Assembly (NCBI GenBank): GCA_025594325.1
Contig: JANHCV010000001.1
Coordinates: 744,001-808,000 of the forward strand
Length of the DNA stretch: 64,000 nt
Direction: 5' to 3'
Source: Blastocladiella emersonii ATCC 22665
Lineage: Eukaryota > Fungi > Blastocladiomycota
The position numbers and the translations under genes were made by a program. Below the pieces are notes generated by a model. The model was given only the letters and a program-made list of their open reading frames with translations. It did no database searches and was not told the origin of the DNA. Positions 42,784 through 64,000 of the stretch are shown here, one piece after another. Position 1 is the stretch's first letter; each line of letters begins with the position of its first letter.

Positions 42784-43502
42784 TCAAACAGCTGGCGCAC
42801 GCACCTCCTGCAGCCACGCGTCGACCGCCGCAAGCCCGCCGTCCGACTGGGTAGTCAGCACGAGCTTGCCGTAGAGGACCATCTCGATGCCCGGGTTCTG
42901 GCTGGTGAAGAAGTACGTGTTGGTGAGGAACACCGTGACGGGCGGGCACGGCGACTTGTCAGCCACCACGTCCTTGAGCATGGCGTGCTCGCAGTCGTCG
43001 AGGAGCTCCTGGGGCGACTTGATGATCGCGATGTGCTCGACGCGGCCCTTGCGCTCCTCCTTGGCCTCCTTGAGTAATGTCGCGCGCGTCAGCAAGACCT
43101 CGCATGCATCGTCGAGGTACGTTTCCCCCCATCGTAACCGGGCGAAACTGCTGGGGAAGCGGCTCCGTGAGGACGACCTGGACACGGTGGTGATCGGGTA
43201 CGTCGGGGGTGGCGGTGTCGAGGCCGTGCGTGTGGGCAAACGCCGGGTCCTCGGTGTAGATGCGCACGTCGTACAGCGTCGAGCCGGGCGGCACCAGCTC
43301 GTGGAACATGGCCGAGAGTGCGTTGGTCCACGTCACTTCGAGCATGTGCACGGGGATGCGGAGCGTGTCCGGGCCCGCGGGTACGCGCACGACGGCGAGG
43401 CGGCGGAGGACCGCGTGCGTGAGCGGGGCCAGGTCGGCCGAGCCGATCAGGATGCCCGCCATGGCCACGTCGAGTGCTGTAGCGTCGAGCCCGGCCTTGG
43501 TC
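42784..43502 (-). CDS. Module gene Y (left copy), unknown protein; 5' exon not located
   Basis: LRIPVHMLEVTWTNALSAMFHELVPPGSTLYDVRIYTEDPAFAHTHGL. A 52-nt GTACC..CTGAC..AAG intron joins it in frame to EAKEERKGRVEHIAIIKSP...; homologous to 63.4-63.8 kb. Confidence 0.6.
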
Positions 43503-43963
43503 CTAGGGTACGGCAGCTTTCGTCGCGCTGGAGATAGATTTGAATGGCCAAACTTGACTCTGATTGCATTTATTAAAGGTTTATGAATGCTTCCCTGTTT
43601 TGGATATCAATTTGTGAGGCGTCGACGCTCTTCGCGTCCCTCGAATGGCTCCATGGCGCGTTGACACTGCGCAGTTGTGAGCGACGGCCAAGCCGTGTGC
43701 ACTATCGACCAACGGAACGTGGTATAAACGACTGCGAGGCTATGTTAACGCTCACCGGGATAGTTGTAAAAGACGAGGCGACGATGGCCACGGCCATGGT
43801 CGCGTGGCCGCGGCCACGAAGACCCGATCAACTCCCCCATTCTGTGATCGCGCTGGTCTGTGCGTCATTCAACGAGAGCGCGAAGCGTAGAAAAGATTCA
43901 AGGCAACAGTCAGATACTTTCATCGCTTTCGAGGACAATATTCGACGCAACGAGCCCCGAATC

Positions 43964-45345
43964 TCACCAGTAGTTCGACGCCTCGGCCGCGGCCGCAGCG
44001 GCAGCGGCAGCCGCGCGTGCGCGCCACTCGGCCTTGCCCTGGTCGGACCCGCCGGTCAGGCACATCTCGCACCACGACGCGAGAACGGCAACGGCCTGTG
44101 CGGTACGAACGTGGACCACGCAGTTGACGACATTACCACTGAGCAACTCGTCGGCCATTGAGGTGGACGACTCGTCGGTCGAGACCAGTATCACCGCCTG
44201 CGAGTACTGCGCGGGCCGGCGGCGTACCAGGTTCGCGAGAATCGCATAGTTGATCGCCTTGTTCGCGACCGGGACCACCGGGTGGTGCGTCATGTTGCTG
44301 CGGCCGTGCAGAAGCGGCTGCCACTACCATCGGTTTGACGCCCGTGTTAGTCTTCGTCGTCGGCTTGCGCGTGGGAGAACTCGTCAGCAGGGAAGCGAAC
44401 CTGGAACTCGTTTCCGACGGATTGGTACACGTGGACGTGGAACCACGGCTTGTCGAGGGTCTCGATCAGGTCCGCGGTCGCCGGCACCGAGTCGCCATCC
44501 CACATGACGAGAACGGGCGTGGTGTCCTCGCTCTGCCAGTCTGCTAGCCAGCCGCGGTGGAACTCGAACAGCTTTGCCATCATGACCATGCAGTTAAAGC
44601 TGAGCAGCTTAACGCGGTTGTTGGCGAGCACGTCCGTGAAGGCTTCGGCGTGGACGTGGTACTGGCGGAGCATCATGTCGCAGAACCGTGACACGGGCAT
44701 GGTAACCGACTGGCTCGTCGCCGTCGGCGGGCGCCGGTGCAGGATGGTCTCGGGCGCGAAGCAGTTGTAAAGGTGCATCAGCGCCATATCGTCCACCACT
44801 GGAACCGCGCCGTTGTCGTGCAGGTCGGGGACGGTGGACGCGATCTTGTAGAGGTAAGCACAATGAGAGAGTGTCACCGGACCGTCCCCGTTGAAGTTGA
44901 GGTTGACCATGGCAACGGCGACGGCCGCGCCGCCCTCGCGAGCGGCGTCAGCAAACGCGTCAAGCACGCCCTGGATCAGGTCGATGATGGCGGACACGCC
45001 AGTACGGTTCCACTCGGGACTCGCAGACGGCTTCGCCAGCAGCTGCAGTACGTCCTGGACCACGCCTGGCGCGTCATCGTCGAGCGTGTACATGCTCGCG
45101 AGTTCGGCGGCCCGAAACGCGTCGTACGTTTCTTCCGACGCCGCGGCGACGTCCAGTAGGGCATCGAATGCGCGGCCGATGAGCTCCTGGCCGCGGCGGA
45201 CGAACGTGCCGAGGTGCAGCGACGACGCGTCGTCGGCGGCAAAGTCGGCGCGCAGCTGGTCGAGGTCCCGCTGCACCGCCGCGGCCGCGTTAGCCGCCAC
45301 GTCGGCAGCCGACTGCTGGTTCTCCTGAGCGTCAATCGCTTCCGA
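43964..45345 (-). CDS. Module gene X (left copy), unknown helical N-terminus plus PIN/NYN-like C-terminal pattern; start exon uncertain
   Basis: Long open exon 45345-44401, intron 44400-44324, exon to 43964; homologous to 61.4-62.96 kb. Confidence 0.7.
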
Positions 45346-45934
45346 CTACACGCGGATACCGAACACCATCAGCGTCGCCGGTTCGTGTCATGTAGATCGC
45401 TCACGGCGCGCGCAACCCGCGGCGCCGCGAGCGGTGGTCAGAGCGGACTTATGTTGCTCATGGCCCATTCAGTTGCAATGTGTTCCATGCGTTCAAAGAG
45501 CTCCGTGGTGGCAGTGGCCTGCGGTGTTGGAGGGAGAGGGGAACGGGCGCGAGCTGTGAAGGGCGAGGACGCGCGTGGGACACGCGTCACGCTGGCCGCC
45601 GCGCCGCCACGACAGCTCGCTCGGCCATCGCGAACTCCATCACACGCGATGCGTTACTTCGTAGGTGCTGGAAATTTCTTCCCTGCACCCTCGAGCTTAT
45701 GTCTAAGGGAGAATGTTCGCAGTTACCAGTGGGACGCGAAACTTGAATCAAGGGTTCTTCTTGGTCGCCGCGAGCTTCAGCGTCCATCGTTGAGCGAGAC
45801 CCCGCCCGGATTAACGAATCCACGGCTGTTACGGCTGTAGTCAGATTCTAGCAGCACGTTTCCGGTCGTCCCGGGAAGAACGTTGGTCTCCATCGGTCGG
45901 GGCTCAGCCTGCAAGTAAGTCCAAGTTTCGTGTC

Positions 45935-46433
45935 GATGGCCATGGTCATCAATCCCCGGCCACCATGACCACCGCCTCGACCACGGCCATGGGCTTGCGG
46001 AGCTTAGTTTACTAGAAACGCGTTTACATCTTCCGTTCGATCCGATTCAACTTACAAAACCACAGCGAAGCGAAGGCTCGGATCAACTCCCTCCACCGGC
46101 ACGTCAAGGTGGCCAGCGGCAATCGCTGCCACGGAACTCGAGACGCTGACGACCAGGTGCGCCAGGAATCGAAAGCACCCCGAGAAACCAGTCCGTGACT
46201 TCGTGTACGCGACCGGCTGAGCGCGTCCGTACCTCACTCACTCACTCAAATCATCATCGTGGCGGTTGACCGGCCTGGGTTCGGCCTGAGGTGCGTCGAG
46301 TCGCGAGAATCGATGGCCATGGTCAGCGGTCCCTGGCCGCCGTAGCCACCGCCTCAACCACGGCCATGAGTTTAAGAAGTTTCGTCAGCTCTTCAAGCAC
46401 ACCTGATCCTTCGCCGACCTCAACTTACAGACC
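45935..46433 (+). repeat. Two diverged direct copies (about 120 bp) starting GATGGCCATGGTCA at 45935 and 46312
   Basis: Shared gatggccatggtca...ccaccgcctc(g/a)accacggccatg...tcaacttaca blocks. Confidence 0.75.
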
Positions 46434-46530
46434 CGGGTCTGGTGAGCACCACGACATAGATCTATCACATTCATCGGGGCACATCATGCTGGCCAACAGC
46501 GAGCACTGCCCGCGTGATCCCTAATCGCGC

Positions 46531-47046
46531 TCACCAATGCGATGACCCGACGTCGAAACACCCGGCGAGATTGACCAAGCGCATTGCAGACCGAAAGTAC
46601 CGAAGGAGCGGAGCGGTCCGCGACCTCGTGCACGCGCCCGTGTTCGAGCATTCGTACTCCTCGTTTTGACAGCGGCGACCGAGCTGCGCCAGCTTGCCGT
46701 GCGTGAAGCTCAAGCGAGAAAACGTGAACTCGTACCCGGCCGTCGAAAGCACCGCCCATCGCTCCGCCCTGGCCCGCTTTATCAGGGCACCATAATGGTG
46801 CGCGAACGGGTCTAAGGGAGCGACGAGGGCGGCGAGCGGTGCCGGCGAGGATCGTTCGGGACAGCAAGCTTGAGGCCGCACGAAGAGAGCAGCGGAAAGG
46901 TACCGGGGAGAAATGAGAGTACGGCGACGAACGACGCGTGCGCGAGGTCGCGGATCGGATCCAGTCTTGGTACCGATGATTGCTGGACGGGGAATGCAGG
47001 TGCGAGTCAGTTTCGGGGTCTCGGAGAGGGTGTCAGGTCGGCGTAC
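46531..47046 (-). pseudogene. Module gene W remnant (left copy)
   Basis: Intron 47046-46983 (GTACGC..CTGAC..CAG), then QSSVPRLDPIRDLAHASFVAVLSF, a frame break, and LVAPLDPFAHHYGALI; matches 60.0-60.5 kb. Confidence 0.55.
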
Positions 47047-48418
47047 CAGATGCGAAGGGTGAGAACCGGTCGTTAATCAGATGAGTGAGGTTGCCGGGCA
47101 GCAAGTAGATGCCAGCGACCACCGAGAAATCAACAAAGAATGGTCGGACGCGGAAAAAGCACGGCGCCGGCGACAGCTCGAGAAGTCGAAAAGGGGTTGC
47201 AAACATGATGGGTTTGACGCGTTGAGTGCGCGCAGTTGCACATCGCCCTGCCGCTTCACACGTTCGAGGTCCGACGCCGAGTCCGACAGTCATGCATACC
47301 GCCGCCAGCTCGTCCTTGGGCACCGTGAAGAATCGGGCTCTGAAAAGTCTTGCGGGCAGTGTACCACTCGATCTCAATGAGATTGGTACACAGGCTCCAA
47401 CGCGCGTCGCCGGGTCGCGCTCACAATGAGTTGCGTTCCACTGCGTTCGAGGCCCTGTATGGCGATTCCGAGTCCCGTCACCGTCCAGGAAACGGTTCGA
47501 CGACGCAAGCGCACTTGCAGCGCGGTCTCGAGGTGCTTGAGACTTGTCGGGCAAGCGATTCGTTCCACCACCTGCATCCCATTTGCAAAAGCAGAAGCCG
47601 GTTGCAGCCGGAGCAACCTCGAGCGGAAGCACCGCGAAATTCAATCTCAGAGGGTTGGATTTGACACGGTTCCCGCCGGCGGACAAGGCGTTCGACGAGG
47701 CCGATACATGACGCGACGCCGACCAAGCGGACAGATCGCTGGAACAAGAGCAAGGAGTTCTAGATAGTGCGATGCATGGAGATATTTGCGAAAGAGGCCC
47801 GGAGCAAGTGTGAGGGGGGGGGAGGAGCTGCTGCTGCTGACGCGCGCGCGGGGGGCGGGGCAGCGAGCGGGGTCGCTCGGCCGGGAACGTGATGCACCAC
47901 TACGCCGACGTCGGTCGGGTCGGCTGTACCACTCACCGTGGTCGACTCAGCGCTGGCTTGTCGCGCATCGCGAAGGCTCGTTATGCGTCTCGAGCGGTGG
48001 CCCTGGACGCCGGCTTATCCCGTCAGCCAAGAGCGGAAGCTGGCGACCGTTCCTCGCTCACGCGCTCGCCGCTCGCGGCCGACCACCGCACGTAAGCTGC
48101 CCGCGCGAGGACGGGGTGGACTTCGTCGAGCCAGAAGTCCAATGACTGTCATGGTGATAGTGCTGCTTGAGAAGCGAGGTTTCGAGCGCTACAGCCGGCT
48201 CACGACGCGAGTCTTCGTCGCGTCGCTGGACCAGGTGGGAAGCGTAAGAAGCGCGTCAAAATGCCATCGACAAGCCGCAAGGGCGACAAGCTGCCAAGAC
48301 CGAGGCGACTCGAGAGAGAGAAAGGCGTGATAAAGAGACTCTGACTCGTATTCACACACGCGGGGACAACGAAAACGACACGGGGGAGGGAAGCGAATAC
48401 ACAAAAACAAACACACAC

Positions 48419-48447
<29 letters not shown>
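48419..48447 (+). repeat. (ACG)n microsatellite in the SKP1-like 3' region
   Basis: About nine consecutive ACG/CGA units visible. Confidence 0.8.
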
Positions 48448-48449
<2 letters not shown>

Positions 48450-48478
48450 CAGCACGAGCCGCGGCGCGACGTGCCGCC

Positions 48479-49027
48479 TTAGTTGTTGCTGTTGTTGGTG
48501 TTGGCGGCGTCGGCCCAGGCGAACTCGGCGCGGATCTTGACCTTCTCCTCCTCGGTGAGGTCGTCGGGGAGGTTGAACTTCTCGCGGATCTCCTCCTCGG
48601 TCTTGCACGCGTCGAGCATGCGGGCGAGCATCTTGCAGGCGAGGTCGAGCAGGGGCTTGATCTCGAGGTAGTTGGCGGCCAGCGTGAGCTCGATGATGTC
48701 CGACTGCGGAATGTCCATGAACTTGGTGTCCCAGTCGGACACGGGCGCCTGGCGCAGCGCCTCGATGGCCTCGTACTCGTCCTGGTCCGGGTCGGGCTCG
48801 GGCACCTCGTCGTCCACGTGGTGCTCGAGCCACTCGAGCACGCGCTTGAGGGCGCGCTCCGACACGTTGGGCAGCGGCACCTCCATGTCCTCGGCGCAGT
48901 CCTCGAGAATGTTCTTGAGCAGCACCGACTTGGCCACAATCGCGTGCGTCGTCGTCACCGTCTTCTTGTCCGACGTCACCAGGCGGACCTCGAGCGTGGC
49001 GGGGGCGGCGGCAGCAGAGTCAGACAT
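48479..49027 (-). CDS. SKP1: Skp1-family SCF adaptor, divergent, intronless
   Basis: SVLLKNILED, VPLPNVSERALKRVLEW, WDTKFM, ELTLAANYLEIKPLLDLACK, EEIREKFNLPDDLTEEE. Confidence 0.9.
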   Translation of the reverse strand: MSDSAAAAPATLEVRLVTSDKKTVTTTHAIVAKSVLLKNILEDCAEDMEVPLPNVSERALKRVLEWLEHHVDDEVPEPDPDQDEYEAIEALRQAPVSDWDTKFMDIPQSDIIELTLAANYLEIKPLLDLACKMLARMLDACKTEEEIREKFNLPDDLTEEEKVKIRAEFAWADAANTNNSNN

Positions 49028-49292
49028 GCTTCGTTGCGGGTGCGTGTCGATGCGTTGCAGCGAGTGTGGGCGAGATGCATGCGCTTGCGTGCTGGGCTGC
49101 GGGAGGAGGGGGGTGCGAACCGGCGGCGCCCGTTTTATAGCAGCGCTCGCTCCTTGCCGGCTTGCTCGCCGGCCGGCCGCGTCAGGCTCGAGTCACACTT
49201 TGCTGCACTGCTCGCCAACGCGTTCCTCGCGTACTCTGACCTCTCCTCCGGCAAAGTCGTGAAGAGGGGTATAACCGCACTGTATTCATCAC

Positions 49293-51045: not shown

Positions 51046-51587
51046 GCCGCGCGGAGAGAGAGGGGGCGGGCGGTCGGGCGGGGCGGGCGCGCGACGACCG
51101 GTAGCGGTGGAGGTGGAGGTGGTGGTGGGGGCAGTGTGGCGCAGGCGAGGAGGGGGACGGGCGAGGCGGCGGCGGCGGCGGCGCAAGCCATGAGACGAGT
51201 CGCCGTCCGCGGTCCAGTGGTCGGCGGGCGGGTGTGGTCGAGCGAGCGGGTGTGGTCGAGCGAGCGGGTGCGTCGCGCCAGGCGATCGCTCCTCGATGGC
51301 GGCGGCGACGGCAGCGGTGGAGTGGGGTCGCGGCGGGAAGAGAGCGCGCGCGTGCGTGGAGGGTCGCAGGCGGGCGGGCGGGCGGGCAGGGCGGGCCTAG
51401 CGCGAAAGTTGCATGGAAGTGGTTGCTCGGTGCTTCCGAGAGGAGGAGAGAGCGAGAGCTTACGGCGGACCGGCGCAGCCCGGAGCAGACCAGACCAGCG
51501 TCGTCGCGCCGGCCACGTGAAGCGTGTCTCCCGATCACGCGAATGCCGATCCCCGCTTGGCCGCAATCGCGTCGCGTTCTTCATATA

Positions 51588-54500
51588 TTACACGTCGTCC
51601 TTCCTCGGCCCTCCCGGCGGCGACGACGTCAGGTACACGGCCTGGTGCGGGACCGCGCGCGCCCACGCGAGGACCGCGCGCTTATCGAACGCGGGCCCCG
51701 CGGCTCCCTGCTCGCGGCCGCGCGCGACCGTCGCGCGCCAGCCGCCGTCCTGCTTGTGCTGCCCGTCGTCGTGCGTCGTGATCCACGGCGCGCCAAACGC
51801 GGCGAGGTCGAGCAGCAGCACGCCGTGCGTGAGCGGGGACGCGTCAGCTCCGCTCCCGCCGCCGCCGTGGCAGAACAGGTGCACGACGCGCGTGGTCGCG
51901 GGCGGGAGCTCGATGCGCGGCGGGTCGAGCGCCGGGTCGAGGTGGACCGCCGGGTGGTCGAACCGCGCATCGCCTTCTTCCCTCCCCACCGCTACCGCGC
52001 CGTTGGCTGGGGCCGCGGGCATCCGGCCAGCCGCGAGCGCCGCGTCTGCGGCAAGGACCGCGCCGCGCTCGTCGGCAGTCAGCGCGTGCCACGCGAGGAT
52101 CCCGATGTGCGCCGTGACGCTGAACGGCGCGATGTTGGTGATCTCGAGCGGGACGGTCGGGGACGCGCCGAGCTGGACGACGCCCGACGCCGGGTTCCGC
52201 CGTGGCGTCGCGACGTACACGGGGCTCCCGCGGACCGACACGCGCGCGGGGATGGACAGGGTACCCCCGCCCGCGTGGTGCAGCGTCACGGTCCGCGCGA
52301 AATCGCCGGCGGCCGTCGCGACCGCCCACACGCCAACCTCCACAGACGCGCCCGCGGGCACCGTGCCCCACGGCGGGAACACGGCAAAGGCGGCCCCGCG
52401 TTCGCCGTTCGCCAGCGACCACGCCTGCTGCGCGAGCGCCATGGTGTCGGCGTGCGGGACGCCCTTGCGCGGGACGACCGCCGCCTCGTCGTCGTCAGTC
52501 CAAGCGGGCCCGCGCGCCGCACACTCGGGTGCCGCCATGAACTCGACGGGCACCGGGCTCGCGTTCGTCAGCACCACGCGCCGCTCCGTCCACCCGAACA
52601 GCGCGAGGGGGCCGTAGTCGAGGGTCGCCGTGTCGCACGTCAGCGCTGGGTGGACTGCGGTGCCGCGGACGCGCACGACGGCGGGCTCGGCGCCCGGGAC
52701 CGTGAGGATGAGATCCGCCAAGACCGGGCCTGCGCGGGAGCACGTCGCGACCACGTCGATGACCGCCGTCGCGCCGCCCGGGATCGCGACGCTGCGGCTC
52801 GACAGGTCAAACTCGAGATCGTCGCCCGCCGTGACGGTCCGGATCGCGACCTGCACCGGCGCGCGCGTCGGGTTCGTGATCTCGACCGGGACCGAGCGCG
52901 GCGCGCCGACCCACACCGGGTCGAGCGCCACGTCCTCGCGCACCTCGATCCGCGGGACGACCGCCGTGAGCGTGAACGGGACGACCGCTGCGACCTCCGC
53001 CGCCGGGGCGTGCCCGCGCGCCTCGTGGACGTGCGCCGTACACTGCACCGTGCCCCGCAGCGCGTCGACGGGGCGGACAGGGATGCACTGGACGCGGACA
53101 GCGACGGACGCGCCGGGCGCGAGAACACCCGCAGCGGGGTCGGAGCGGAACACGGCGTGCGTCGTCTGGGTGTGGGTGACGAGCGGGACCGCGGCGAGTC
53201 GCCAGTCGAGCGCGCGGCGCAGCGGGTCCGCGTTCGTCAGCGTGACAGTGGCCGTCTGCGTCTCTCCGAGCGCGAGCGGGCCGAACTCGACGCTCGGCGG
53301 GCTCACCTGGACCAGCGCGTCGGCCGCATCCACCACAACCTGCACGGGCACGCGCTGCTGCCACGCGGCGACGGTCCCCGCGGGATCCCCCGCGACGGCC
53401 TGCTCGACGATCACGCACCCGTTGACGGCACCCGGCCACGCGCCGCGGAGGTCGAGCGCGACAGTCCGCGTCTCCCCCGGCGCGAGCGGCGTCTCGGCCT
53501 TAGCGTCGACGACGCGGCACCGCAGGATGTGTTCGGGCACGTTCTCGATCCACCACCGCAGCGGGACCGACGCGGCCGACCGGTTCGTCACGGTGACCGC
53601 CGACGTGTGCGACGCGCCGACGCGCAGGGTTCCGGGGACCGACACGCGCGGCGGGTGCACGTCGATGGCGATTGCGGCGACGGTCGCGGTCAGCGAGAGC
53701 GTCGCGGCGTGGACCGGAATGTCGTCGCCCTCGGTGCTGGCGAGCAGACGCACGTGCGCGCGCGCGTGGAGCGGGCGCGGCGCGGTGCTCGTGACGGTGG
53801 CGACGACGGACGCACCGGGCGCGAGAACGCCGCGGCGCGGGGCGATGTTGATGCTCGGCGCGGCCGCCGCCGTGTGCGCGGTATCGAGCGCGCGGTCCGC
53901 GGCCGCGATCAGCTGCGACGCGCTGGCGCCGATCCGGTCCGCGTCCAGGTGCGCGAGCCGTGCCGCGGCGAGGGTCGCGTCGACGTCACCACTACCCACA
54001 TTATCCTCATCGTCGTCGTCGGGCAGCACGACCTCGTCCATGGCGACGGGCCCCCACGCGTACGCGACGGGCAGCGGGGTCGGGTTCGTGACGGTGACGC
54101 TCGCGCAGGCCGGGGTGCCAGGGAACCCGGCGAGGACGAGGGTCGCGGCGCTGAGCTCGAGCGCGGGCTCAGGCGGGACGCGCGCGACGGCGACCACGGA
54201 CGTGCGCGTGGCGCCGTTGTCGCAGTGGATTTCGAGTTCAAACTCGACGAGTTCCGGGAGCGAGTTGGGATCAGCGACCGTCCCCGCGTCCGTGTACGTG
54301 AGCGTGAGGTTGGCGTGGTTCCCGGGCCCGAGGTAGAAGCTCGCGGGCGAGACGGCTAGGGTGCCGGGTGCGCCGCCTCCGCCCGGGCCGACGACGGTGA
54401 GGGTAAACGACCCGGCGCCGCCCTCGTTGACGAGCCGGCGGACCTGCATGACGCTGGCCCCCTTGCGCGCGGGGCACGCGGGGAGGTCCACGGCGTCGGG

Positions 54501-55937
54501 CCACGCGAGGACGGGCGGCGGGCGGTGCGCCGCGACGGGGACGGTCAGCGTGCCCGTGGTCGCGCCCTGGTACTGCACGTCGATCGCGGCGGCGTAGTTG
54601 GCGAGCGAGTCGGGGCGGAACAGGATGTGGATCGCGATGCGCATCCCCGGCGCGAGTCGCACGGGGGTGCGCGGGGTCAGGTGAAAGACCGACGCGAGGC
54701 GGAGCAGCGGCGACCCCGGGTGGATCCCGACGGCCAGCGAGTGCAGCGACCGGTTCAGAATGTCGACGCGCGCCGCGTACACGGTGCCCGGCGTGTAGTT
54801 GGTGAACTGCACGGATGCGGGTTCGGCGGCGATCGGGACCACGCGCGGGACGAGGCCGCGCGGGGAGGCGGGGCGAGGGGGGAGCACCGTGCGGCTACCG
54901 CGAAGGGACGCGAGGGCGTCCTCGGACGCGGCGTCGAGGTGCTCGCGGATGCGCGCGGGCGGGGAGGGCGGGGCGCCGCCTCCAGGCGCTGTGCGGGACG
55001 TGCGGGCCGGGAAGGCGGTGAAGACGGGGCCCTGCGGCGGCGCGGCCTTGGTGATGGACGGGATGGGCGCAATGTAGGGCAGGATGAGCATGTTGGGGCT
55101 GCCGGCGTCGATGGCGGACTGGACGAGGTCGTCGTGGTCGACGAGCGGCGGGAACGCGTAGTCGCCACCCTCGTAAGCGCCGTCCGCGTAGCGGGTGAAG
55201 GAAAAGTCGTCCTCGCCGTCGTTCATGGCCTCGATCATCGAGTCGGTGAGGTAGTAGTTGCTGCTACCGTTGCCTGCATACTCCTCGCTCGATATCGCCG
55301 ACGACGGCGTGGTCGTGAGACTCTCCCCGCTCGCGACCGCCGAGTCCATCGTGTTCCCGCGCTCGGCGGGGAACGCGACGCCGGCGTGGCGCGTGGCGTG
55401 GAGCTCAGCGGCGATCGTGTCGAGGGCGTCCTCGAGCGACGCGATGGCGGTCTCGAGCACGTCGTGCTGGCGCAGGTGTTCGACCAGCATGGCCTGGACC
55501 GCGGGGTTGGAGTCCTCCTCGGCGATCAGGTCGCGCGACGCCGAATAGCGGGGCGAGGCGGCGGCAGTCCGGGCGCGGATCCCGCTGGCGATGCGGCCGC
55601 GCGGCGACGCGTGGCTGCGCAGCGAGGCGGCCGAGCGGTACGCGGAGTAGGGCGTGGGCGGGGTGCGGTGGCTCAGGACCGACTGCATCGACCCGCGCAC
55701 GCTGCCGACGACGCCAGACTGCAAGAGCAGGGCTACGTTCAGGGGGTCGTGAGACGGGTGGTTTGTCGAGACAAGGGTGGCCGTACTGCTGCGGTGCGAG
55801 GCGAGGCTCGCCTTGGACCCGCGCATGCTGCGTGGCGCATCGTCGAGTGCCGCCGCGGCGGGTGGGGCGTCGAGGGCGCCCGACGAGGGTGCGGCTGCGA
55901 GCGCGGCGGCGGGTGCGGGTGGTTCGGCAGCTTGCAT
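51588..55937 (-). CDS. DLEC1: DLEC1/CFAP81-like central-pair ciliary protein with repeated ASH/PapD-like domains, single exon
   Basis: VQFTNYTPGTVY...LAPGMRIAIHILFRPDSLANY...VPVAAHRPPPVL matches the recalled DLEC1 pattern; repeated Ig-like 'V.F..L.LG....TVTLTN' units. Confidence 0.75.
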   Translation of the reverse strand: MQAAEPPAPAAALAAAPSSGALDAPPAAAALDDAPRSMRGSKASLASHRSSTATLVSTNHPSHDPLNVALLLQSGVVGSVRGSMQSVLSHRTPPTPYSAYRSAASLRSHASPRGRIASGIRARTAAASPRYSASRDLIAEEDSNPAVQAMLVEHLRQHDVLETAIASLEDALDTIAAELHATRHAGVAFPAERGNTMDSAVASGESLTTTPSSAISSEEYAGNGSSNYYLTDSMIEAMNDGEDDFSFTRYADGAYEGGDYAFPPLVDHDDLVQSAIDAGSPNMLILPYIAPIPSITKAAPPQGPVFTAFPARTSRTAPGGGAPPSPPARIREHLDAASEDALASLRGSRTVLPPRPASPRGLVPRVVPIAAEPASVQFTNYTPGTVYAARVDILNRSLHSLAVGIHPGSPLLRLASVFHLTPRTPVRLAPGMRIAIHILFRPDSLANYAAAIDVQYQGATTGTLTVPVAAHRPPPVLAWPDAVDLPACPARKGASVMQVRRLVNEGGAGSFTLTVVGPGGGGAPGTLAVSPASFYLGPGNHANLTLTYTDAGTVADPNSLPELVEFELEIHCDNGATRTSVVAVARVPPEPALELSAATLVLAGFPGTPACASVTVTNPTPLPVAYAWGPVAMDEVVLPDDDDEDNVGSGDVDATLAAARLAHLDADRIGASASQLIAAADRALDTAHTAAAAPSINIAPRRGVLAPGASVVATVTSTAPRPLHARAHVRLLASTEGDDIPVHAATLSLTATVAAIAIDVHPPRVSVPGTLRVGASHTSAVTVTNRSAASVPLRWWIENVPEHILRCRVVDAKAETPLAPGETRTVALDLRGAWPGAVNGCVIVEQAVAGDPAGTVAAWQQRVPVQVVVDAADALVQVSPPSVEFGPLALGETQTATVTLTNADPLRRALDWRLAAVPLVTHTQTTHAVFRSDPAAGVLAPGASVAVRVQCIPVRPVDALRGTVQCTAHVHEARGHAPAAEVAAVVPFTLTAVVPRIEVREDVALDPVWVGAPRSVPVEITNPTRAPVQVAIRTVTAGDDLEFDLSSRSVAIPGGATAVIDVVATCSRAGPVLADLILTVPGAEPAVVRVRGTAVHPALTCDTATLDYGPLALFGWTERRVVLTNASPVPVEFMAAPECAARGPAWTDDDEAAVVPRKGVPHADTMALAQQAWSLANGERGAAFAVFPPWGTVPAGASVEVGVWAVATAAGDFARTVTLHHAGGGTLSIPARVSVRGSPVYVATPRRNPASGVVQLGASPTVPLEITNIAPFSVTAHIGILAWHALTADERGAVLAADAALAAGRMPAAPANGAVAVGREEGDARFDHPAVHLDPALDPPRIELPPATTRVVHLFCHGGGGSGADASPLTHGVLLLDLAAFGAPWITTHDDGQHKQDGGWRATVARGREQGAAGPAFDKRAVLAWARAVPHQAVYLTSSPPGGPRKDDV

Positions 55938-56386
55938 GGTGTGCGTGTCGCTACATGGCCTCGAGTGCGGGTCGCGCTGCTGGAGCCGACCAACGCGTGC
56001 TGCGTGTCTCGCGGCCGACGCGTCTCTCGTTCGGCACGCGTGGGTCACGCCGGCGCGCGGATCGCGGCCAGTGGGCGTCGCGGCACGTGCGCCGTGCGTC
56101 GAGCGCCACCTTTGCCGTTTCGCTCGTCCGGGTCCGCCGCCTGGTCCGCCTCCGCCGAGTCGTCCCTTTCGGAGCGCCCCCTCGACGCTCCCTCTCCCCC
56201 ACAACCCCATCCTTCCGCTCCCTGCGACGCAACGTAACGCCCGCTCATCGAGTCTGCCTGGTCCCCGCGCAAACGCACCGACCGCCTCGACTCGACCGAC
56301 GACGACGACGACGACTAGACGCCGCGCGCCGCGAGAGCAACCCCCACCGCACCCAACCGCCACCACACCCCCACCCCGCCGACAAG

Positions 56387-58016: not shown

Positions 58017-58094
58017 TTTCCCTTCTCTCCCCCTTTGTGTAAAACCCCATCATCAACTGTACAAGAACGGGAACTATCAAAACCCGCGTTTTTC

Positions 58095-58844
58095 TTACTC
58101 CATGGCAATGATCTTGGGCGACCCGTCGCCGTCCACGGACACCACCTCCTCGATGCCGCTGCCGGCGTCGGACGCGGGCGCGGCGGGCGCGGGTGGGATG
58201 CTGTGGATCGTAACGGTCGCCTTGGGCTCGTTGTCGTCGGCCGACCGCGCTGCGGGCGGAGGCGGGAGCGCTGCCGTACCCTTGCTCGAGGTGCCGGACA
58301 CGCGGCGAACGACGTACGAGATGCCGCGGACCACCTTGACGGTGATATAGCTCGCGCCGATGAACGCGGTACCTACATGCCGCGATCAGTCAGCGCGCGA
58401 AGCTCTCGCAGGGATCGGCGCACAGAATCGTACCGCCGACAACGATGCGGCCCGTCAACCGCGTGCGCTCGACAAACGTGTCGACGCGCTCGGGCGGGTA
58501 CACGAGGCACGCGAGGCGGTACCCGGCGCGCGTCCGGTACATGGCGTACGACGTGCCCGTCGTCAGCGCCGCCACCAGGAGCTTGCCGGCGGCGGAGCCC
58601 TACGCGATCGCATGGGAAGTTGTCAGCGTCAACGGGCGAGAGCGCAGACAGCGGGTGTGGACAGTACGATCGCGTTGCCGAACCCGTGGCCGACGCCGAC
58701 CAGGAACGCCATGAACCAGCTCGGCTTCTTGGGCTCGGCCGGCGCCGCCGCGACCGCCGTCGTCGAGGACGGAGTCGTGGCGGTGGCGGCGGGCTTCGTC
58801 TTGCCCGATGCAGCGGGTTTCGTGATGCGGTCGGCGCGCGGCAT
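58095..58844 (-). CDS. Small 3-exon probable membrane protein of unknown function
   Basis: MPRADRITKP...WFMAFLVGVGHGFGNAI|GSAAGKLLVAALTTG...GRIVVGG|TAFIGASYITVKVVRG; canonical GTAC..CTGAC..TAG introns. Confidence 0.65.
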
Positions 58845-60004
58845 GGTTGTTGATGCGTTGCAGGAACGGCGGGGTGGAGAGCGGAGAGCGGAGAGCGGGA
58901 AGAGAAAGCGACGAGTGGCTCAGAGCGCCGATCACTTTTCACGTTGGTCGCCGCTGTCGCGACTCGTCGCCCGTCCTCTCCTCTCTCAGCGACGACGCGG
59001 GGCACACTCCTCCTCGCTCTTGAGCAGCGGTATAGAGTAACACTGCGCAAGCGGGTGACGCAGGAGGGTGCGGGTCACAGTCGGCGTGGCCGCGGCACGG
59101 ACGCCGATGGCGACCTCTGCTCGTTCACGGCGACCATGGCCGCCCTTGGGAAGCCAACCGGTGACAGCACTTGACATCAGCCTGATCGTCGCGGGTCGGG
59201 GTAAGTTTGAAGAGCGCGCGGGTGGCGCGACGCGGTCGGCGGGGTGAGCGAGCGAGCGGCCGAGCGCGCGGCGCGCTCACGACTGACCCCCGCCTCCTCC
59301 CCTCCCGCTTGCCCCGCGACCTTATCATGATATAAGTCCATGCATCGCATTACCTAGACCCTCTTGCTCCTATCGCTGTGTCTTGCTTGCCCGGATTATG
59401 CTTTCGTGTCGCGCGCCGGGCCTACCGACGCGCGAGTCTGCCGCTGTGCGCCAAGTTTGACAGTCGCGACGCTTGAAATCAAGACGTCAGCTATGAGCGT
59501 CGATTTTTTGTACCAGCACCGACCGTGCATCGACGGCATGGCGCACGGACGGCATGTTTGGATCGTCGGCCAGCTCGTATCATGGTTTGAAACCCACGTA
59601 ACGCGTTGGTCCCGATCCTTGCCTAGGTGCGTACGTCTGAGCAGCTTGGGCGCGCCCAGTGTGGTGCTGAACCGCATTCCCCGAGTGTAGCGTGACGTGC
59701 TGCTGAACCGACCCTGCAACCCGACACATGCTCACTCGGTCGCATTCCCAAACGGAGGCAGCCGACTAATGCATGCCACTGGCTGGGTTGCCCTTCCAAA
59801 TGGTTGCGGCTGCGGTTCGCTCATCATCTCGGTCACTTGCTTCTGTGCGCTCGATTTCTGCGCGAGACTCGCGGACTCTCAGCACGGCGTCCAGCATATG
59901 GCCCCGTGGCGATCAGTTCGGCAGAGCCGCGGCACTCGGGCCAAACTTATCATCAACTCGCTAAACCTGTAAGACGCACTCCCAGCGATGGACTTTCATG
60001 TCGA

Positions 60005-60532
60005 GTACGCCTCGTTTCGTTCTCAACCGTCCGATCCCCGGCTAACACTCGCATCCGCGTCCTCGCGTAGCCATCGTCGGCGCCAAAACCGGATCCGACC
60101 TGCGACCTCGCGCACGCGCTGTTGGTCGCCGTGTTCTCGCTTCTCATTCGGCGCTTTCCGCTGCTGCTTGGTCTCATGCTCGTGATACTCGCGCGCTTCC
60201 CGCTGAATCTTCGCCGGCACTCTCAGCACGCGCTCGTCGCTCCCTCCCGCTCATTTGCGCACCGCTTCGGTCCCCTGATAACCGCGGGCAGGGACGGAGC
60301 GAGGGGCGCCGCGGGTTTGCCAGCGATGGCCGGGTGCGTGTCGGGGGCCACCGTGGTCCGTGCCACCGGGATAATCGCTGAACGAGATTTGACGGCTTTG
60401 CCAACATGGGCGCGTGCACGGGATCGCATGTCGCTTCGGTTCTTGGTCCGACGGTCGACATGTCGCGTCCCTCGCGCGGGTGTCGCTGTTTTGTTGATCG
60501 GCATGGATCATATACGAATGAATATTTGTTAA
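60005..60532 (+). pseudogene. Module gene W remnant (right copy)
   Basis: Intron 60005-60070 (GTACGC..CTAAC..TAG), then PSSAPKPDPTCDLAHALLVAVFSL...ALVAPSRSFAHRFGPLI. Confidence 0.55.
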
Positions 60533-60741
60533 GAAACGCTAGATCCCTGTTTTTAAGTAAAATTATCAAAATGAAGGAATGGATAGGGTCGGTCGCGCAG
60601 ATCTACGACCTCGCGATGGCCACGGTCACGGCCAACCGCTTCCTGTTGCTACCAGCCATCAACCTTCACAACTAGCTTCTGTCCGCGATGAGGACGCATC
60701 AATCAATACTTGGACCATGTAGCTCCGCGAAATGACACTAG

Positions 60742-60770
60742 ACCGGTTCAAGCTACTAGCTTGAACCGGT
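60742..60770. repeat. Perfect 14-bp inverted repeat with 1-nt spacer
   Basis: accggttcaagcta-c-tagcttgaaccggt. Confidence 0.9.
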
Positions 60771-61433
60771 TAGGCTAACCGCGTGGACCGGCGAGAGAGA
60801 ACGCTCGTCGCTTCTGAGATGTCAAAGTGCGAGGCCCACACTTCTGAAATTTCATGTATTGTGCATGTGACCAGCAGGCTTGCTAATAAATCGGGACTCT
60901 CGACTTGTTTCCGATCGTGGTGGCCCGAAGCGGCCACGATCACGGCCACGAAGCCTTGAGAGCAACCAAGGTCCGCGGGAATGATGAGAGCTGGGCCGAC
61001 ATCAGCGTGATTGCTCGTCGGCCGACCGATGAGCGAGGTACCGCGTTATCAGACAAGAGAGCTTGTTGAGGAGGATCGGCGAAGGTTCAAGCACGTTGTG
61101 GCGCGGGTTTCGCGACGTTCACCTCAGCGTGCGGAAACGCGACTTCGAGTCGAGGCGGCGCCGCGCGAAGCTGTGCGCTTCCTCTCCCTCCCTCTTGCTC
61201 CGGCTCTTCTCTCACGCCAGTCCACCGTGACTTGATGAAACTCATGAAGAAAACACGCACATCACGGAACGGTTCCGCCGCAGGAAACGTAGGTCCTTGT
61301 CGTGACTTGAGCGGATCGCGGCGGCAACCGGGCCTGACGAGCCGGCTTCCATGCGTAGCCTGCGCTGGCACGCTCCCAGCGTCAGCTGCGGCCTCCCACT
61401 GCGGCCGCGGAGGCCTCGGGTCCTGCGTCGCCC

Positions 61434-62961
61434 ATGGCTCAGCAGACGCTGGACCACATTCGCGCTGCACTCCCCGCTGAAGGGTCGATACCCGTTGGCG
61501 ATTCGGTAAACGGTTGCCAGTATATCGCCTACGCAGCTGCAAACCACATGATGTACGCCGCGTCGCTGTCGGGCGGGACGGAGAATCCGCACGTGGCCGC
61601 GCCGCCGCCGGGCAGCGCACAGCTCGCGCTCAAGGCCGTGTCCGAGACCGATGTGCTCAACCTCGATAACGCGCCGCAAGTGGTGCTCCATTTGCGCCAG
61701 CTGATGGTGACGGCGCCGAAAACCCCCCGTTGCGCCGCGAGGACGCGCGCTTCATGTAGTCCCAGGTGGAGCTCTTCATTGACAAGATCGAGCGGCAGCA
61801 GGCCAACGGCGACAGCGGCCGCGGCCGCGGCCGCGGTGCGGGTGACGCGGGCGCCGGTAGCATCCTCGTCGAGCGCAAGGGCAACGACAACGAGGTGGCC
61901 GAGGAGGAGGAGTCGCAGCAGCCGCAGGACCCGGACGTGACGCCCGCTCATTGTGCCTTTCTCACTTTGCTCGGGCGCAAGAACATGCACCTTCACGCGG
62001 CGGGTGTTGCGGTGCCGGCCGACGACTGGCCGCTGCTTCAGACCTTGACATCGGCGGTGCCAACGAACGTCTGTCGCGAGCAGCCAGTCTCGGCGCTCGA
62101 ACACGCGTCGACGCATGGGGCACACCTGCACAACGTGTTGCTGTGTGGTTTCGGGGTCCATGCCCGCGATTTCATGCGCACCGTCGCCGACAACCGCGTC
62201 GCCGGGTTTGGAAGTCGGTTCCTCGACGCCATGAAGACGCTTCTCGCGGCGTATCGTGGTCCCGATGCCCTTGCTCGACACGGTCTCGCCAACGGCGACG
62301 ACCACGCGCTCGTCATCGTCCTGTGGGACGCCAACACGGTGTCGGCGACGGCCGACCAGATCGCGGCCATAGACGAGCCGTGGTTCGACACGCATGTGTG
62401 CGCGAGTGCTGCCAAACAGGCCGAGGTACGCTCTTCCGAGGGCGAGCGTGACCTGCTCGACTGGGACTGACTTTGTACGACGCACGGTAGTGAAACGCCG
62501 TCACGGGCAAGCGCAGCAGCCGCATCAAGTCGCTCACGGTGGACGCCGAGCCGTCGGCGGCGCTCAAGCACCGCGTTCTCGCGCACGTCGCGGCGGCGCT
62601 CGGCTCGCCGCGCCCGCGGCCCGTGATCCTCATCTCGGACGGCACGATCTTCGACGGCGTCGAGGACACGGCGCGCCGCGAGCTCGGTCTGGACCGCCTG
62701 GTGGCGGCGGCGGGGAACGGCAGCGATGCCGACCGGTGGGTCCTGCAGGTGCGCACGCCGTTGGCCGCGACCGTGATCATGTCGTGGGCCCAGATGTGCC
62801 TCACGGACGGGCCCGACGAGGCCAAGGGCGAGTGGCGCGCGCGCGCCGCCGCGGCCGCGACCGAGGCATCGTCTCAGGCGTCCAAGAAGGCGACGTCCAA
62901 GAAGGCGACGTCCAAGAAGGCGACGTCCAAGAAGGTGTTGTCGGACGGCAACCGTCACTGA
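61434..62961 (+). pseudogene. Module gene X (right copy), inactivated
   Basis: Colinear with left X but has a 1-nt frameshift near 61,725, TAG at 61757-61759, and TGA at 62491-62493 where left X has TGG. Intron 62426-62490 is at the same position as in left X. Confidence 0.75.
62877..62934 (+). repeat. 15-bp tandem repeat encoding SKKAT x3-4
   Basis: aggcgacgtccaaga units visible. Confidence 0.85.
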
Positions 62962-63212
62962 ATGAAGAACTATTGTCCCCTTGTAAAGTCGCTCGCCTGA
63001 GTCGCAACGTCGTGAGCGCGGTGACGTAGTACGCTCATGCCGGCAGGCAGATGAAGCGGATCACGGTGGCCACGGCGACGGCGGCCGGGAGGGTTGGTGG
63101 TCCCACGCTGCTCCGTCGGCCGCGCCGGGTATAAAACGCGTTCCCGCTCCCGCCCTCCTGCTCTCCCTCTCTCCCACGACGATCTCTTCTATCAAGAACA
63201 CTCACTACCTGC

Positions 63213-64000
63213 TATGCATCAACCACCGTGCTCTCAACCGCCGCGGGCAACACCACCACCTTCAACTGCCCGCCGGCGCCCCAGTGCTTGACGCGCGAGG
63301 AGTTCGTTGCCGCCGCGTGCGTCTCGTCCTCGAGGCGTGCACAATCGCTCTCTGGAATCTCTAGCTGACGGGCTACCCCCCTTGTCTAGTGTCGAGGCCG
63401 GCCTCGACCCCATCTAGCTCCTGTCCGCCATCGCCGCGGCGCCGGCTAGCGCTCCGGACCGCGTGCCGGTGACGCGGCCCGTGCTAGAGAAACTACGAGG
63501 GCTCGTCCAGTTCACGGACCCCGAGATCGTCATCCCCGTGCACGTCCTCGACGCGGCGTGAACCGACGCGCTCGCCGCGACGCTGCGCACCCTGCCGTCG
63601 CCCGACGCGCCGTGCCGCTTCGACGCGACGGTGTACACGTTTGACGCGGGGTTCGCCGAGACGCACGGCATCGGCCCGGCCGCGGCGCACGGCGCTGATG
63701 ACGGCGGCGCACGGGTTCATGTGCGTGTCGAGGCGCCGCCCGTCAACGAGCTGTTCCCGCTACGTTCCGAAGGTCAAGCTGGTCGCGCAGCGTGGATCCG
63801 CAGCTTAGAACTCGCTCGTGCCACCAGGACCCGACTACGACGACCACAACGACGAGGAGTACACCAAGTACGACTACTTGGACGGACCCGGCACGAGCAC
63901 CGTCCAGGCGATCCCGTCGCCGTCGCCGTTTTCGCCACGGCAGCAACTCCAGCACTACCACCAGCAGCAGCACCACCACCATCTGCAGGCGGAGCCGTGG
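63213..64000 (+). pseudogene. Module gene Y (right copy), inactivated; runs to the window edge
   Basis: IVIPVHVLDAA*TDALAATL...FDATVYTFDAGFAETHGI aligns with left Y. TAG at 63415-63417, TGA at 63559-63561 (W in left copy), and the ATG is out of frame with the exon-1 reading frame. Confidence 0.7.

What the first reader, a model, noticed from the sequence alone, without database searches (positions are those of the whole stretch)
42784..64000. Inverted duplicate three-gene module (W-X-Y) bracketing about 13 kb of host genes
Seen: reading outward from the centre, both arms carry the same order: W (conserved GTACGC intron, DLAHA..VAV..), a repeat-rich spacer, X (VT..HCA.L; VHA..F....A.NRV; V..WD...V.ATAD.I...D.PWF..HV; same last intron; VRT......SW..MCLT.G.D..K.EWRARAAAAA), then Y (IPVH.L....T.AL; D..(I/V)YT.D..FA.THG). 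The left arm is on minus (47.05 to 42.78 kb), the right arm on plus (60.0 to 64 kb). Between them lie SKP1-like, ERF2-like, DLEC1-like, the dynein adaptor and a membrane protein. I do not recognise any of W, X or Y as a known transposase. Inference: either an undescribed multi-gene mobile or selfish cassette (composite-transposon-like, able to invert or carry the enclosed block) or a toxin/antidote- or defence-type module that duplicated by inversion.
Basis: partly seen in the sequence, partly recalled or inferred. Interest (0 to 1): 0.8.

Follow-up and report, generated by a model that had tools for sequence, protein, structure and literature searches.

The report
Old inverted duplicate of NYN-like gene
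The two mirror-image stretches around 13 kb of ordinary genes in the fungus Blastocladiella emersonii are real, but they are old, strongly diverged copies of one lineage-specific gene unit (a nuclease-fold protein plus a partner part), one copy already dead, and nothing marks them as a jumping element.

Summary
The inverted, colinear homology is real (left 42.8-47.8 kb on minus, right 59.3-64.3 kb on plus), but only selected segments still align: 67-77% DNA identity, 30-58% protein identity.

- **X:** a helical domain plus a divergent NYN/PIN-like domain. The best structural match is the MARF1 NYN domain (Z 9.9). The family is restricted to Blastocladiomycota and has at least 11 loci in this genome.
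- **Y:** a family found only in B. emersonii. It lies 0.6-1.7 kb downstream of X on the same strand at seven loci on three contigs. NCBI models X_L and Y_L as one gene.
- **W:** not a protein gene. It is a conserved fold-back of about 350 nt, with no codon periodicity and indels that are not multiples of three.
- **Right arm:** X and Y there are pseudogenes. The arm also lies in an 8.5 kb inverted repeat (one mismatch) whose partner is 45 kb further on, across a stretch rich in transposon remains.

I found no transposase, terminal repeats or near-identical dispersed copies, and codon usage is host-like.

Verdict: an old inverted segmental duplication within a fast-evolving, lineage-specific gene-family cluster, not a composite transposon. 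A toxin/antidote or defence role for X-Y is untested. Other first-stage notes of this scan flagged the same NYN-like family elsewhere in this genome.

The parts
42787..43501 (-). Y_L: left-arm member of the Y family, two blocks (about 43184-43501 and 42787-43068), open reading frames intact
   Evidence: Profile search E 1.8e-71 and 5.7e-35. Matches residues 444-637 of the NCBI model P0007. GC3 0.91-0.93.
44033..45372 (-). X_L: left-arm member of the X family (helical domain plus NYN-like domain), two exons (44401-45372 and 44033-44323), open. Motifs WDGDSV and LVSTDESS.
   Evidence: E 1.5e-108. NCBI model H9P43_000272. The start coordinate is inferred from that model.
45933..46385 (.). Spacer between W and X, with one 76-nt direct repeat pair (45933-46008 and 46310-46385, 79% identical)
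   Evidence: No TRF arrays. No other genomic copy apart from a 52-nt match on C5.
46600..46960 (-). W_L: conserved non-coding fold-back of about 360 nt, bounded by an inverted 23-nt motif (46614-46636 and 46935-46957)
   Evidence: 71-77% identical to W_R, with indels of 5, 6, 1, 1 and 8 nt. Mismatches 16/13/15 by phase. MFE -163 kcal/mol, z -3.9. 12 of 87 pairs changed on both sides.
47748..47820 (.). Innermost conserved patch of the left arm, pairs with 59296-59369
   Evidence: 73-82% identity. Peak of 64% in the arm alignment. Function unknown.
48479..49027 (-). Skp1 paralogue inside the bracketed block. It has an inverted paralogue 23 kb away, at C1:816408-816803.
   Evidence: Pfam Skp1 and Skp1_POZ. 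45% aa identity over 135 aa, E 1e-22.
51588..56366 (-). DLEC1/CFAP65-type Ig-repeat ciliary gene inside the bracketed block. The block has ordinary host composition, 70-75% GC.
   Evidence: Pfam. GC profile.
59296..59369 (.). Innermost conserved patch of the right arm
60095..60435 (+). W_R: right copy of the fold-back. Its 3' 90 nt also occur at C1:866924-867013 (80% identity), beside X_6.
   Evidence: MFE -171 kcal/mol, z -3.8.
61434..62961 (+). X_R: right-arm X, a pseudogene. There is a frame change between '..MVTAPKTP' and '..ELFIDKIE' and an in-frame stop. Motifs WDANTV and LISDGTIF. The tail carries a 15-nt tandem repeat (62879-62935).
   Evidence: The NCBI model P0009 skips the lesion with an intron.
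63379..64000 (+). Y_R: right-arm Y, a pseudogene with a stop at the conserved Trp of 'VLDAAW'. It continues to about 64340, beyond the window.
60942..64000 (.). Start of the proximal arm of an 8.5 kb near-perfect inverted repeat: C1:804942-813496 against 858163-866717. There is one mismatch after position 60967.

Best explanation
The two arms are old paralogous copies of one host gene unit of Blastocladiella emersonii, produced by an inverted segmental duplication inside a cluster of the same family on contig 1 (about 786-868 kb).

- **The unit:** an upstream non-coding fold-back (W), then X, then Y. X encodes a helical N-terminal domain and a divergent NYN/PIN-like alpha/beta domain. Y is a B. 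emersonii-specific partner, either the 3' exons of the same gene or a tightly linked second gene.
- **Age (shown):** since the duplication, unconstrained DNA has diverged to background identity. Only W, the conserved exons and one short patch still align.
- **State (shown):** the left copy is still open. The right copy is dead.
- **Later history (boundaries shown, mechanism inferred):** the right arm became part of a roughly 9 kb inverted repeat with a partner 45 kb away. I infer that this repeat was homogenised almost to identity by gene conversion or by a recent re-duplication.
- **Setting (shown):** the cluster lies in lower-GC stretches rich in transposon remains, where several other inverted duplications are seen. 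Nothing in the arms encodes or resembles transposition machinery.
- **Function (inferred only):** X is most likely an RNA-binding or RNA-cleaving protein of the MARF1/NYN type. The acidic motifs look intact in some paralogues and are replaced in both arm copies. Y would act with it.
For: **Homology and age**
- Colinear inverted matches.
- Identity peaks only at constrained segments.
- X_L against X_R: 33-36% aa identity, dN 0.57-0.68, dS 0.84-0.86.

**Family**
- At least 11 X loci and at least 12 Y loci in the genome.
- Only 14 X relatives (E <= 0.001) among 1.84 billion representative proteins. Of the 12 whose source I identified, 11 are Blastocladiomycota: 7 B. emersonii, plus B. britannica, Coelomomyces, Catenaria and Allomyces. 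One is an unnamed Logan-assembly protein.
- The seven annotated B. emersonii paralogues form one clade, support 100/99.

**X-Y linkage**
- Same-strand adjacency at C1:788k, 805k (and its near-identical copy at 865k), 812k and 925k, at C4:641k and at C17:743k.
- NCBI fuses X_L and Y_L in H9P43_000272.

**NYN fold**
- AF2 domain model with pLDDT 77.
- MARF1 NYN domain is the top hit by Foldseek (E 5e-3, probability 0.97) and by VIA-align (Z 9.9, rmsd 3.1 over 120 aa). Rae1/YacP and 2qip also score Z above 8.
- The nearest ESM Atlas clusters are NYN, score 0.86.
- Weak PF01936 hits in two distant homologues, E 0.03 and 0.09.

**W is non-coding**

**Right arm is dead**

**Resident in the host**
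GC3 of 0.82-0.96, like the neighbouring genes.

**No mobile-element marks**

**Other inverted duplications nearby or in the family**
- The 8.5 kb repeat.
- The Skp1 pair.
- The Y copies on C20.

**Transposon-rich interior**
Gypsy, Harbinger and PIF1-helicase ORFs.
Against: - X_R groups with X_6 (96/95) rather than with X_L. The left/right pair is therefore not a single clean duplication step. At least three copies share the ancestor, and the order of events is unresolved.
- W is better conserved (71-77% DNA identity) than the coding exons (about 54%). Plain neutral decay does not predict that. It needs either selection on W or a later conversion patch.
- The dispersal of X-Y units to three contigs has no shown mechanism.
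- I could list no transcript data, so gene structure, expression and the one-gene or two-gene question are all open.
- The NYN assignment rests on a predicted structure with middling scores. No Pfam model reaches its threshold.
Confidence: 0.7

Rival explanations
1. X-Y is a selfish or conflict-type two-component system, such as a toxin/antidote pair, an allorecognition system or a defence system. X would be the nuclease-fold effector and Y its cognate partner. Turnover under conflict would explain the copy-number burst, the fast divergence and the dead copies. The inverted pair would be one product of that turnover.
For: - Recurrent X-to-Y linkage at seven loci on three contigs.
- Lineage-specific burst with very long branches.
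- dN/dS of about 0.7-0.8 between the arms.
- Variable loss of the acidic motifs among paralogues.
- Pseudogenes present.
- Location in transposon-rich islands.
Against: - There is no functional evidence of any kind.
- X occurs without Y (C16, C1:489k), and Y without X (C20 three times, C11).
- No Y was detected next to the X homologues of B. britannica or Catenaria.
- The NCBI model makes X_L and Y_L one protein, which fits a domain fusion as well as a pair.
- Relaxed constraint after duplication explains the same rates.
Confidence: 0.12
2. The arms are the remains of an unrecognised mobile element that carries X and Y as cargo or as its own machinery. W would be its fold-back terminus. The 13 kb block would be bracketed as in a composite transposon.
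For: - X-Y units are dispersed on three contigs.
- W is a hairpin bounded by short inverted repeats, like a fold-back element or MITE.
- Its 17-nt motif is about 2.7 times enriched in the genome: 59 matches against 22 for the control.
- The edge of the older homology between the 8.5 kb repeat arms falls inside W.
- Harbinger, Helitron-type and Gypsy genes lie nearby.
Against: - No transposase, integrase or recombinase domain in the arms.
- No terminal repeats at the arm ends.
- W occurs only at this locus: two copies and one partial. It is absent from the other X-Y loci I could read.
- There are no young copies with shared boundaries. The one young copy (8.5 kb) starts inside the W-X spacer and ends inside another gene's exon.
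- Codon usage is host-like.
- No known transposase uses an NYN fold (from my own knowledge, not tested here).
Confidence: 0.06
3. The left/right resemblance is kept up by occasional gene conversion between dispersed family members rather than by descent from one inverted duplication. The colinear order would simply reflect the fixed internal order of every family unit.
For: - Gene conversion plausibly acts in this cluster. The 8.5 kb arms differ by one base while their edge is only 71-80% identical.
- W and the short patches are more similar than the coding sequence.
- The X tree does not pair X_L with X_R.
Against: - W and the 47.8/59.3 kb patch are found nowhere else, so they must come from a shared ancestor of these two arms.
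- The order W, spacer, X, Y is colinear over 5 kb, including non-family sequence.
Confidence: 0.1

Closest known systems
MARF1 / limkain-b1 type NYN-domain proteins (Pfam PF01936, PIN-like clan)
   Same: The C-terminal domain of X has the same alpha/beta fold in the model (best PDB match 5yaa, Z 9.9). Some paralogues carry a D-x-D-N motif after strand 1 and an S-G-D-x-S-F motif after strand 4, as NYN domains do. The link to NYN motifs rests on my own recollection of the family.
   Different: - No Pfam model reaches its threshold.
- The N-terminal 300-residue helical domain and the Y part have no counterpart.
- There are no LOTUS/OST-HTH or RRM domains.
- The acidic motifs are replaced in both arm copies.
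- The family is confined to Blastocladiomycota.
Inverted segmental duplications and palindromes kept alike by arm-to-arm gene conversion, as in sex-chromosome palindromes and plastid inverted repeats
   Same: There are nested inverted repeats. The 8.5 kb arms are almost identical while their edge has diverged, the pattern expected from conversion. The repeats hold members of an amplified gene family.
   Different: The old W-X-Y arms are not homogenised at all. Spacers are long (13 kb and 45 kb). No orientation isomers were tested.
Composite transposons or gene-carrying macrotransposons, for example the Harbinger-bounded blocks reported by this scan in the same genome
   Same: Two inverted related arms bracket ordinary genes. 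Real Harbinger and Helitron-type genes occur within 30-45 kb.
   Different: The arms hold no transposase and no terminal repeats. They are ancient and one is dead.
Linked toxin/antidote or killer/immunity gene pairs of eukaryotes, for example peel-1/zeel-1 (from my own knowledge)
   Same: A tightly linked two-part unit, fast evolution, copy turnover and a nuclease-type fold as a possible effector.
   Different: No evidence of toxicity, rescue or drive. The two parts may be one gene. Solitary X and solitary Y copies exist.

Membership tests
NYN domain (PF01936), PIN-like clan | Sequence match to the family profile at the curated threshold | tested here: not met
   No Pfam hit for any B. emersonii X copy. 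There are only sub-threshold NYN hits in two distant homologues: E 0.03 and 0.09, 13.7-15.2 bits against a cut-off of 24.2.
NYN domain (PF01936), PIN-like clan | Three-layer alpha/beta fold with a parallel sheet, superposable on solved NYN domains | tested here: met
   AF2 model of P0002:798-960 with pLDDT 77. MARF1 NYN (5yaa, 6fdl) is the top Foldseek hit, E 5e-3 and probability 0.95-0.98. It is also the top VIA-align hit, Z 9.9 and rmsd 3.1 over 120 aa, about one Z unit above unrelated folds. Support is moderate, not strong.
NYN domain (PF01936), PIN-like clan | Conserved acidic metal-binding residues at the C-termini of the core strands | tested here: inconclusive
   WDGDNV and LVSGDGSF in the C17 copy, and similar motifs in X7. 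The motifs read WDGDSV/LVSTDESS in X_L and WDANTV/LISDGTIF in X_R. I did not map residue by residue onto a solved active site.
NYN domain (PF01936), PIN-like clan | Ribonuclease activity | not testable with these tools
   Needs an enzyme assay.
Composite or DNA transposon | Element-encoded transposase or recombinase | tested here: not met
   No Pfam family for any arm ORF I scanned. The nearest transposase genes are 24-45 kb away, outside the arms.
Composite or DNA transposon | Terminal inverted repeats at the ends of each arm, with target-site duplications | tested here: not met
   There are no end-to-end inverted or direct repeats at 42.7/47.8 kb. The only inverted repeat is the 23-nt pair inside W. 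At this age, target-site duplications could have eroded.
Composite or DNA transposon | Several near-identical copies with the same boundaries | tested here: not met
   Family copies are 24-45% identical in protein. The single near-identical copy has different boundaries, one of them inside an exon of X7.
Linked two-gene toxin/antidote or defence module | Two components conserved as neighbours across copies | tested here: met
   X then Y on the same strand with a gap of 0.6-1.7 kb at seven loci. Solitary X and solitary Y copies also exist, and the NCBI model fuses the two.
Linked two-gene toxin/antidote or defence module | Toxic activity of one part that is neutralised by the other | not testable with these tools
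   Needs expression experiments.
Inverted segmental duplication | Colinear homology in opposite orientation that includes non-family sequence unique to the two copies | tested here: met
   W and the 47.8/59.3 kb patch occur only here. The order W, X, Y is the same in both arms.

The most novel reading that the evidence does not exclude
X-Y would be an undescribed eukaryotic conflict system of Blastocladiella. An NYN-fold nuclease effector would be genetically coupled to a cognate partner (Y) and amplified and diversified in this one species. The conserved 350-nt fold-back W upstream of the X_L/X_R subfamily would act as a hairpin RNA or cruciform control element. The inverted repeats would allow flip-flop of the enclosed gene blocks.
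Probability: 0.1. Interest if true: 0.7.

Novelty: new variant of a known kind. Interest (0 to 1): 0.3.

Why it matters
As a structural feature this is ordinary: an old inverted segmental duplication in a rearrangement-prone region rich in transposon remains.

What is new is the gene family. It is a divergent NYN-like family confined to Blastocladiomycota and invisible to Pfam. In B. emersonii alone it has burst to a dozen loci and is repeatedly coupled to a second orphan family.

If the coupling reflects a nuclease-plus-partner system, it would be a tractable case of fast-evolving RNA-targeting or conflict genes in an early-diverging fungus that is being developed as a model organism.

The near-identical 8.5 kb inverted repeat with diverged edges is also a clean candidate for studying gene conversion and inversion isomers in this genome. 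It also matters for annotation: several current gene models fuse or mis-splice these genes.

Tried and rejected
- **RNA evidence:** The look-up of sequencing runs listed no run. Transcript structure, strand and both-orientation tests are therefore open.
- **Complex prediction:** X7 (two exon pieces as separate chains) with Y7 gave no verdict, score 0.00. This is not evidence for or against binding.
- **Whole-model fold search of X:** 476 aa against the PDB was uninformative. Only the isolated C-domain gave a signal.
- **PDB sequence-profile search:** nothing.
- **Rfam on 41-64 kb:** only two chance-level hits, so W is not a known RNA family.
- **Y:** no Pfam family. The nearest ESM Atlas clusters are unnamed fungal clusters plus a weak F-box lead.
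- **Synteny:**
  - The word search with the enclosed dynein-adaptor ORF found nothing.
  - The B. britannica X locus shares only X with the C16 locus.
  - No Y was found near X in B. britannica or Catenaria.
  - The window's own records are withheld from the look-up of encoding contigs.
- **More genome DNA** (the C4, C5, C11 and other C1 loci) could not be fetched.
- **Integrated virus:** I considered and dropped the idea that the 62 kb between and including the 8.5 kb arms is an integrated virus-like element with long terminal repeats. Its content is Gypsy, Harbinger, PIF1-helicase and acetyl-CoA carboxylase fragments, with no viral hallmark genes among the ORFs I scanned.
- **Spliced models:** Exons were used separately by reference, and full-length proteins were taken only from database models.

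Full report
**Source.** The window is contig C1:744001-808000 of a 32.65 Mb, 21-contig assembly. Protein matches name the organism as Blastocladiella emersonii ATCC 22665. The genome is a PacBio HiFi assembly described in PMC9730499. It is about 70% GC, and the arms lie in lower-GC stretches of 57-63%.

- blastn gives five colinear inverted matches between 43.2-47.8 kb and 59.3-63.7 kb at 67-77% identity, best E 4e-24.
- Six-frame tblastn confirms X (171 aa, 30%, E 6e-19), Y (102 aa, 35%) and the W region.
- In a global alignment of the two 5.5 kb arms, identity rises above background (35-45%) only at W, the conserved parts of X and Y, and one 70-nt patch at 47.8/59.3 kb.
- X_L against X_R gives 33-36% aa identity, dN about 0.6-0.7 and dS about 0.85, probably saturated given GC3 near 0.9.
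- The duplication is therefore old.

**What X is.**
- *Family size.* X belongs to a multigene family. A single-ORF search found 9 loci, and a profile of the paralogues found about 11 plus fragments.
- *Architecture.* An intronless copy on C16 (NCBI H9P43_004057, P0001) and a copy on C17 show the full layout: a helical region of about 300 residues, then an alpha/beta domain of about 160 residues that a conserved intron splits in most copies.
- *Pfam.* It finds nothing in any B. emersonii copy.
- *Structure.* An AlphaFold model of the C-domain, built on the paralogue alignment, has pLDDT 77.
  - By Foldseek its best PDB match is the MARF1 NYN domain, E 5e-3 and probability 0.97.
  - By the Foldseek-independent aligner it is the same domain, Z 9.9 and rmsd 3.1 over 120 residues. 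Rae1/YacP and the LabA-like 2qip are also above Z 8.
- *Other lines.* Language-model features place it nearest to NYN clusters, score 0.86, a lead only. Two distant homologues give weak full-length PF01936 hits, E 0.03 and 0.09.
- *Reading.* Taken together, X carries a divergent NYN/PIN-like domain. Motifs resembling the NYN acidic motifs are present in some copies (WDGDNV and LVSGDGSF) but are replaced in X_L (WDGDSV, LVSTDESS) and in X_R (WDANTV, LISDGTIF).
- *Range.* An exhaustive profile search of 1.84 billion representative proteins returned 14 proteins.
  - I identified the source of 12 of them: seven B. emersonii and one each from B. britannica, Coelomomyces, Catenaria and Allomyces, plus one unnamed protein from a Logan assembly.
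  - I did not look up the other two.
- *Tree.* The seven annotated B. emersonii paralogues form a clade (100/99) apart from the other species, with long branches. X_R groups with X_6 at C1:867k (96/95), and X_L is unresolved.

**What Y is.**
- Y is a second orphan family with no Pfam family. The word search returned only B. emersonii proteins.
- A profile search finds it at about 12 places.
- Y lies 0.6-1.7 kb downstream of X on the same strand at C1:788k, 805k (and its near-identical copy at 865k), 812k and 925k, at C4:641k and at C17:743k. There is a looser pairing at C1:544k/537k.
- Solitary X copies (C16, C1:489k, C1:867k) and solitary Y copies (three on C20, one on C11) also exist.
- The NCBI model H9P43_000272 (P0007, 637 aa) splices X_L and Y_L into one protein. 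H9P43_000277/000295 (P0009) run from X_R into Y_R up to its stop.
- 'X and Y' may therefore be one gene or a tightly linked pair. I could list no RNA data to decide.
- No Y was detected beside the X homologues of B. britannica or Catenaria.

**What W is.**
- W is homologous between the arms at 71-77% identity, better than the coding exons. Its indels are 5, 6, 1, 1 and 8 nt, and its mismatches show no codon periodicity, 16/13/15.
- Each copy is a unit of about 340-360 nt bounded by an inverted motif, GCGACCTCGYGCACGCG.
- Each copy folds as one long imperfect hairpin, z -3.9 and -3.8 against shuffles.
- In the two-sequence consensus fold, 12 of 87 pairs changed on both sides. This is weak evidence, because the structure was derived from the same two sequences.
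- W exists only at this locus. A partial third copy, its 3' 90 nt, sits next to X_6.
- It matches no Rfam family.
- I read W as a conserved non-coding fold-back upstream of X, not as a gene.

**State of the copies.**
- X_L and Y_L are open.
- X_R has a frame change within about 10 codons, too short to be an intron, and an in-frame stop.
- Y_R has a stop at a conserved tryptophan.

**Wider architecture.**
- From 60942 the right arm belongs to an inverted repeat, C1:804942-813496 against 858163-866717. The two copies differ by a single base after position 60967.
- One end of that repeat is sharp and cuts X7 at the start of its second exon, so the distal X7 copy is truncated.
- At the other end, identity falls to 71-80% and continues to 60346/123013, inside W_R.
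- I infer an older inverted duplication later homogenised by gene conversion. A recent re-duplication that started in older homology is the alternative.
- The 45 kb between these arms holds another X-Y unit, a Skp1 paralogue inverted relative to the one in the window (45% aa identity), a Gypsy element, a Harbinger transposase, two PIF1-type helicase ORFs, and a 5'-truncated acetyl-CoA carboxylase copy.
- Two Y copies on C20 are also inverted relative to each other.

**Tests for mobility.**
- No transposase or recombinase domain in the arm ORFs I scanned.
- No terminal repeats at the arm ends.
- No near-identical copies with shared ends.
- X and Y have host-like GC3 of 0.82-0.96. The low GC of the arms comes from their long non-coding spacers.
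- The composite-transposon reading is therefore not supported.

**Verdict.**
- *Main reading.* The finding is a real, old inverted segmental duplication of a lineage-specific gene unit (fold-back W, NYN-like X, partner Y). It sits inside a family cluster in a rearrangement-prone region, and one copy is already decayed.
- *Still of interest.* Three things remain: the undescribed Blastocladiomycota NYN-like family with its burst specific to B. emersonii, its repeated coupling to Y, and the unusually well conserved fold-back.
- *Open.* A conflict-type function for X-Y remains possible but untested. I put it at about 0.1.
- *Other readers.* Other first-stage readers of this scan had independently flagged the same NYN-like family at several places in this genome. 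None of those notes carried a follow-up check.

Noticed in passing
window 60942-64000, continuing to C1:813496; partner at C1:858163-866717: An 8.5 kb inverted repeat with a single mismatch after position 60967. One end is sharp and lies inside exon 2 of another X copy. The other end fades into 71-80% older homology. It is a candidate for arm-to-arm gene conversion and for inversion of the 45 kb interval.
   Followed up: partly
C1:828000-851000 (loci L012-L014): A low-GC (51-65%) transposon graveyard between the 8.5 kb arms. It holds Gypsy gag (zf-CCHC) and pol (RT, RNase H, integrase), a Harbinger DDE_Tnp_4 transposase and two PIF1-like helicase ORFs.
   Followed up: partly
C1:852706-858065 (L014), plus about 40 places genome-wide: A 5'-truncated copy of acetyl-CoA carboxylase, 87% identical to the probable real gene on C18, abuts the distal repeat arm. 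A piece of about 75 aa from the carboxyl-transferase domain occurs at 20 or more dispersed loci. It looks like a host-gene fragment carried by a repeat.
   Followed up: partly
C17:743105-746000 (L006, L026), protein P0002: The NCBI model named 'Endopolyphosphatase' (1014 aa) appears to fuse a metallophosphatase gene with the C17 X-family gene, which forms residues 440-1014.
   Followed up: no
C20:810852-824607 (L021, L022): Three Y-family copies lie here without any X. The first is inverted relative to the other two. A subtilisin-like ORF lies beside the first copy, and the flanks are highly similar.
   Followed up: no
window 48479-49027 and C1:816408-816803: Two divergent Skp1 paralogues (45% aa identity) in inverted orientation. 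Each lies next to an X-Y unit but at a different relative position, so they are not part of the same colinear duplication.
   Followed up: partly
window 46620-46636, 46935-46951, 60102-60118, 60411-60427; C5:859145-866558: The 17-nt motif GCGACCTCGYGCACGCG that bounds the W hairpin has 59 genomic matches at one mismatch or fewer, against 22 for the reversed control. Five of them cluster on C5. I could not fetch that region.
   Followed up: partly
window 62879-62935: A perfect 15-nt tandem repeat, 3.8 copies, encodes (KKATS)n in the C-terminal tail of the dead X_R copy.
   Followed up: no
window 66595-67629 in extended coordinates (L010:2595-3629): An intact 345-aa ORF with GC3 0.89 and no Pfam family lies inside the 8.5 kb repeat, so it is present in two identical copies.
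   Followed up: no
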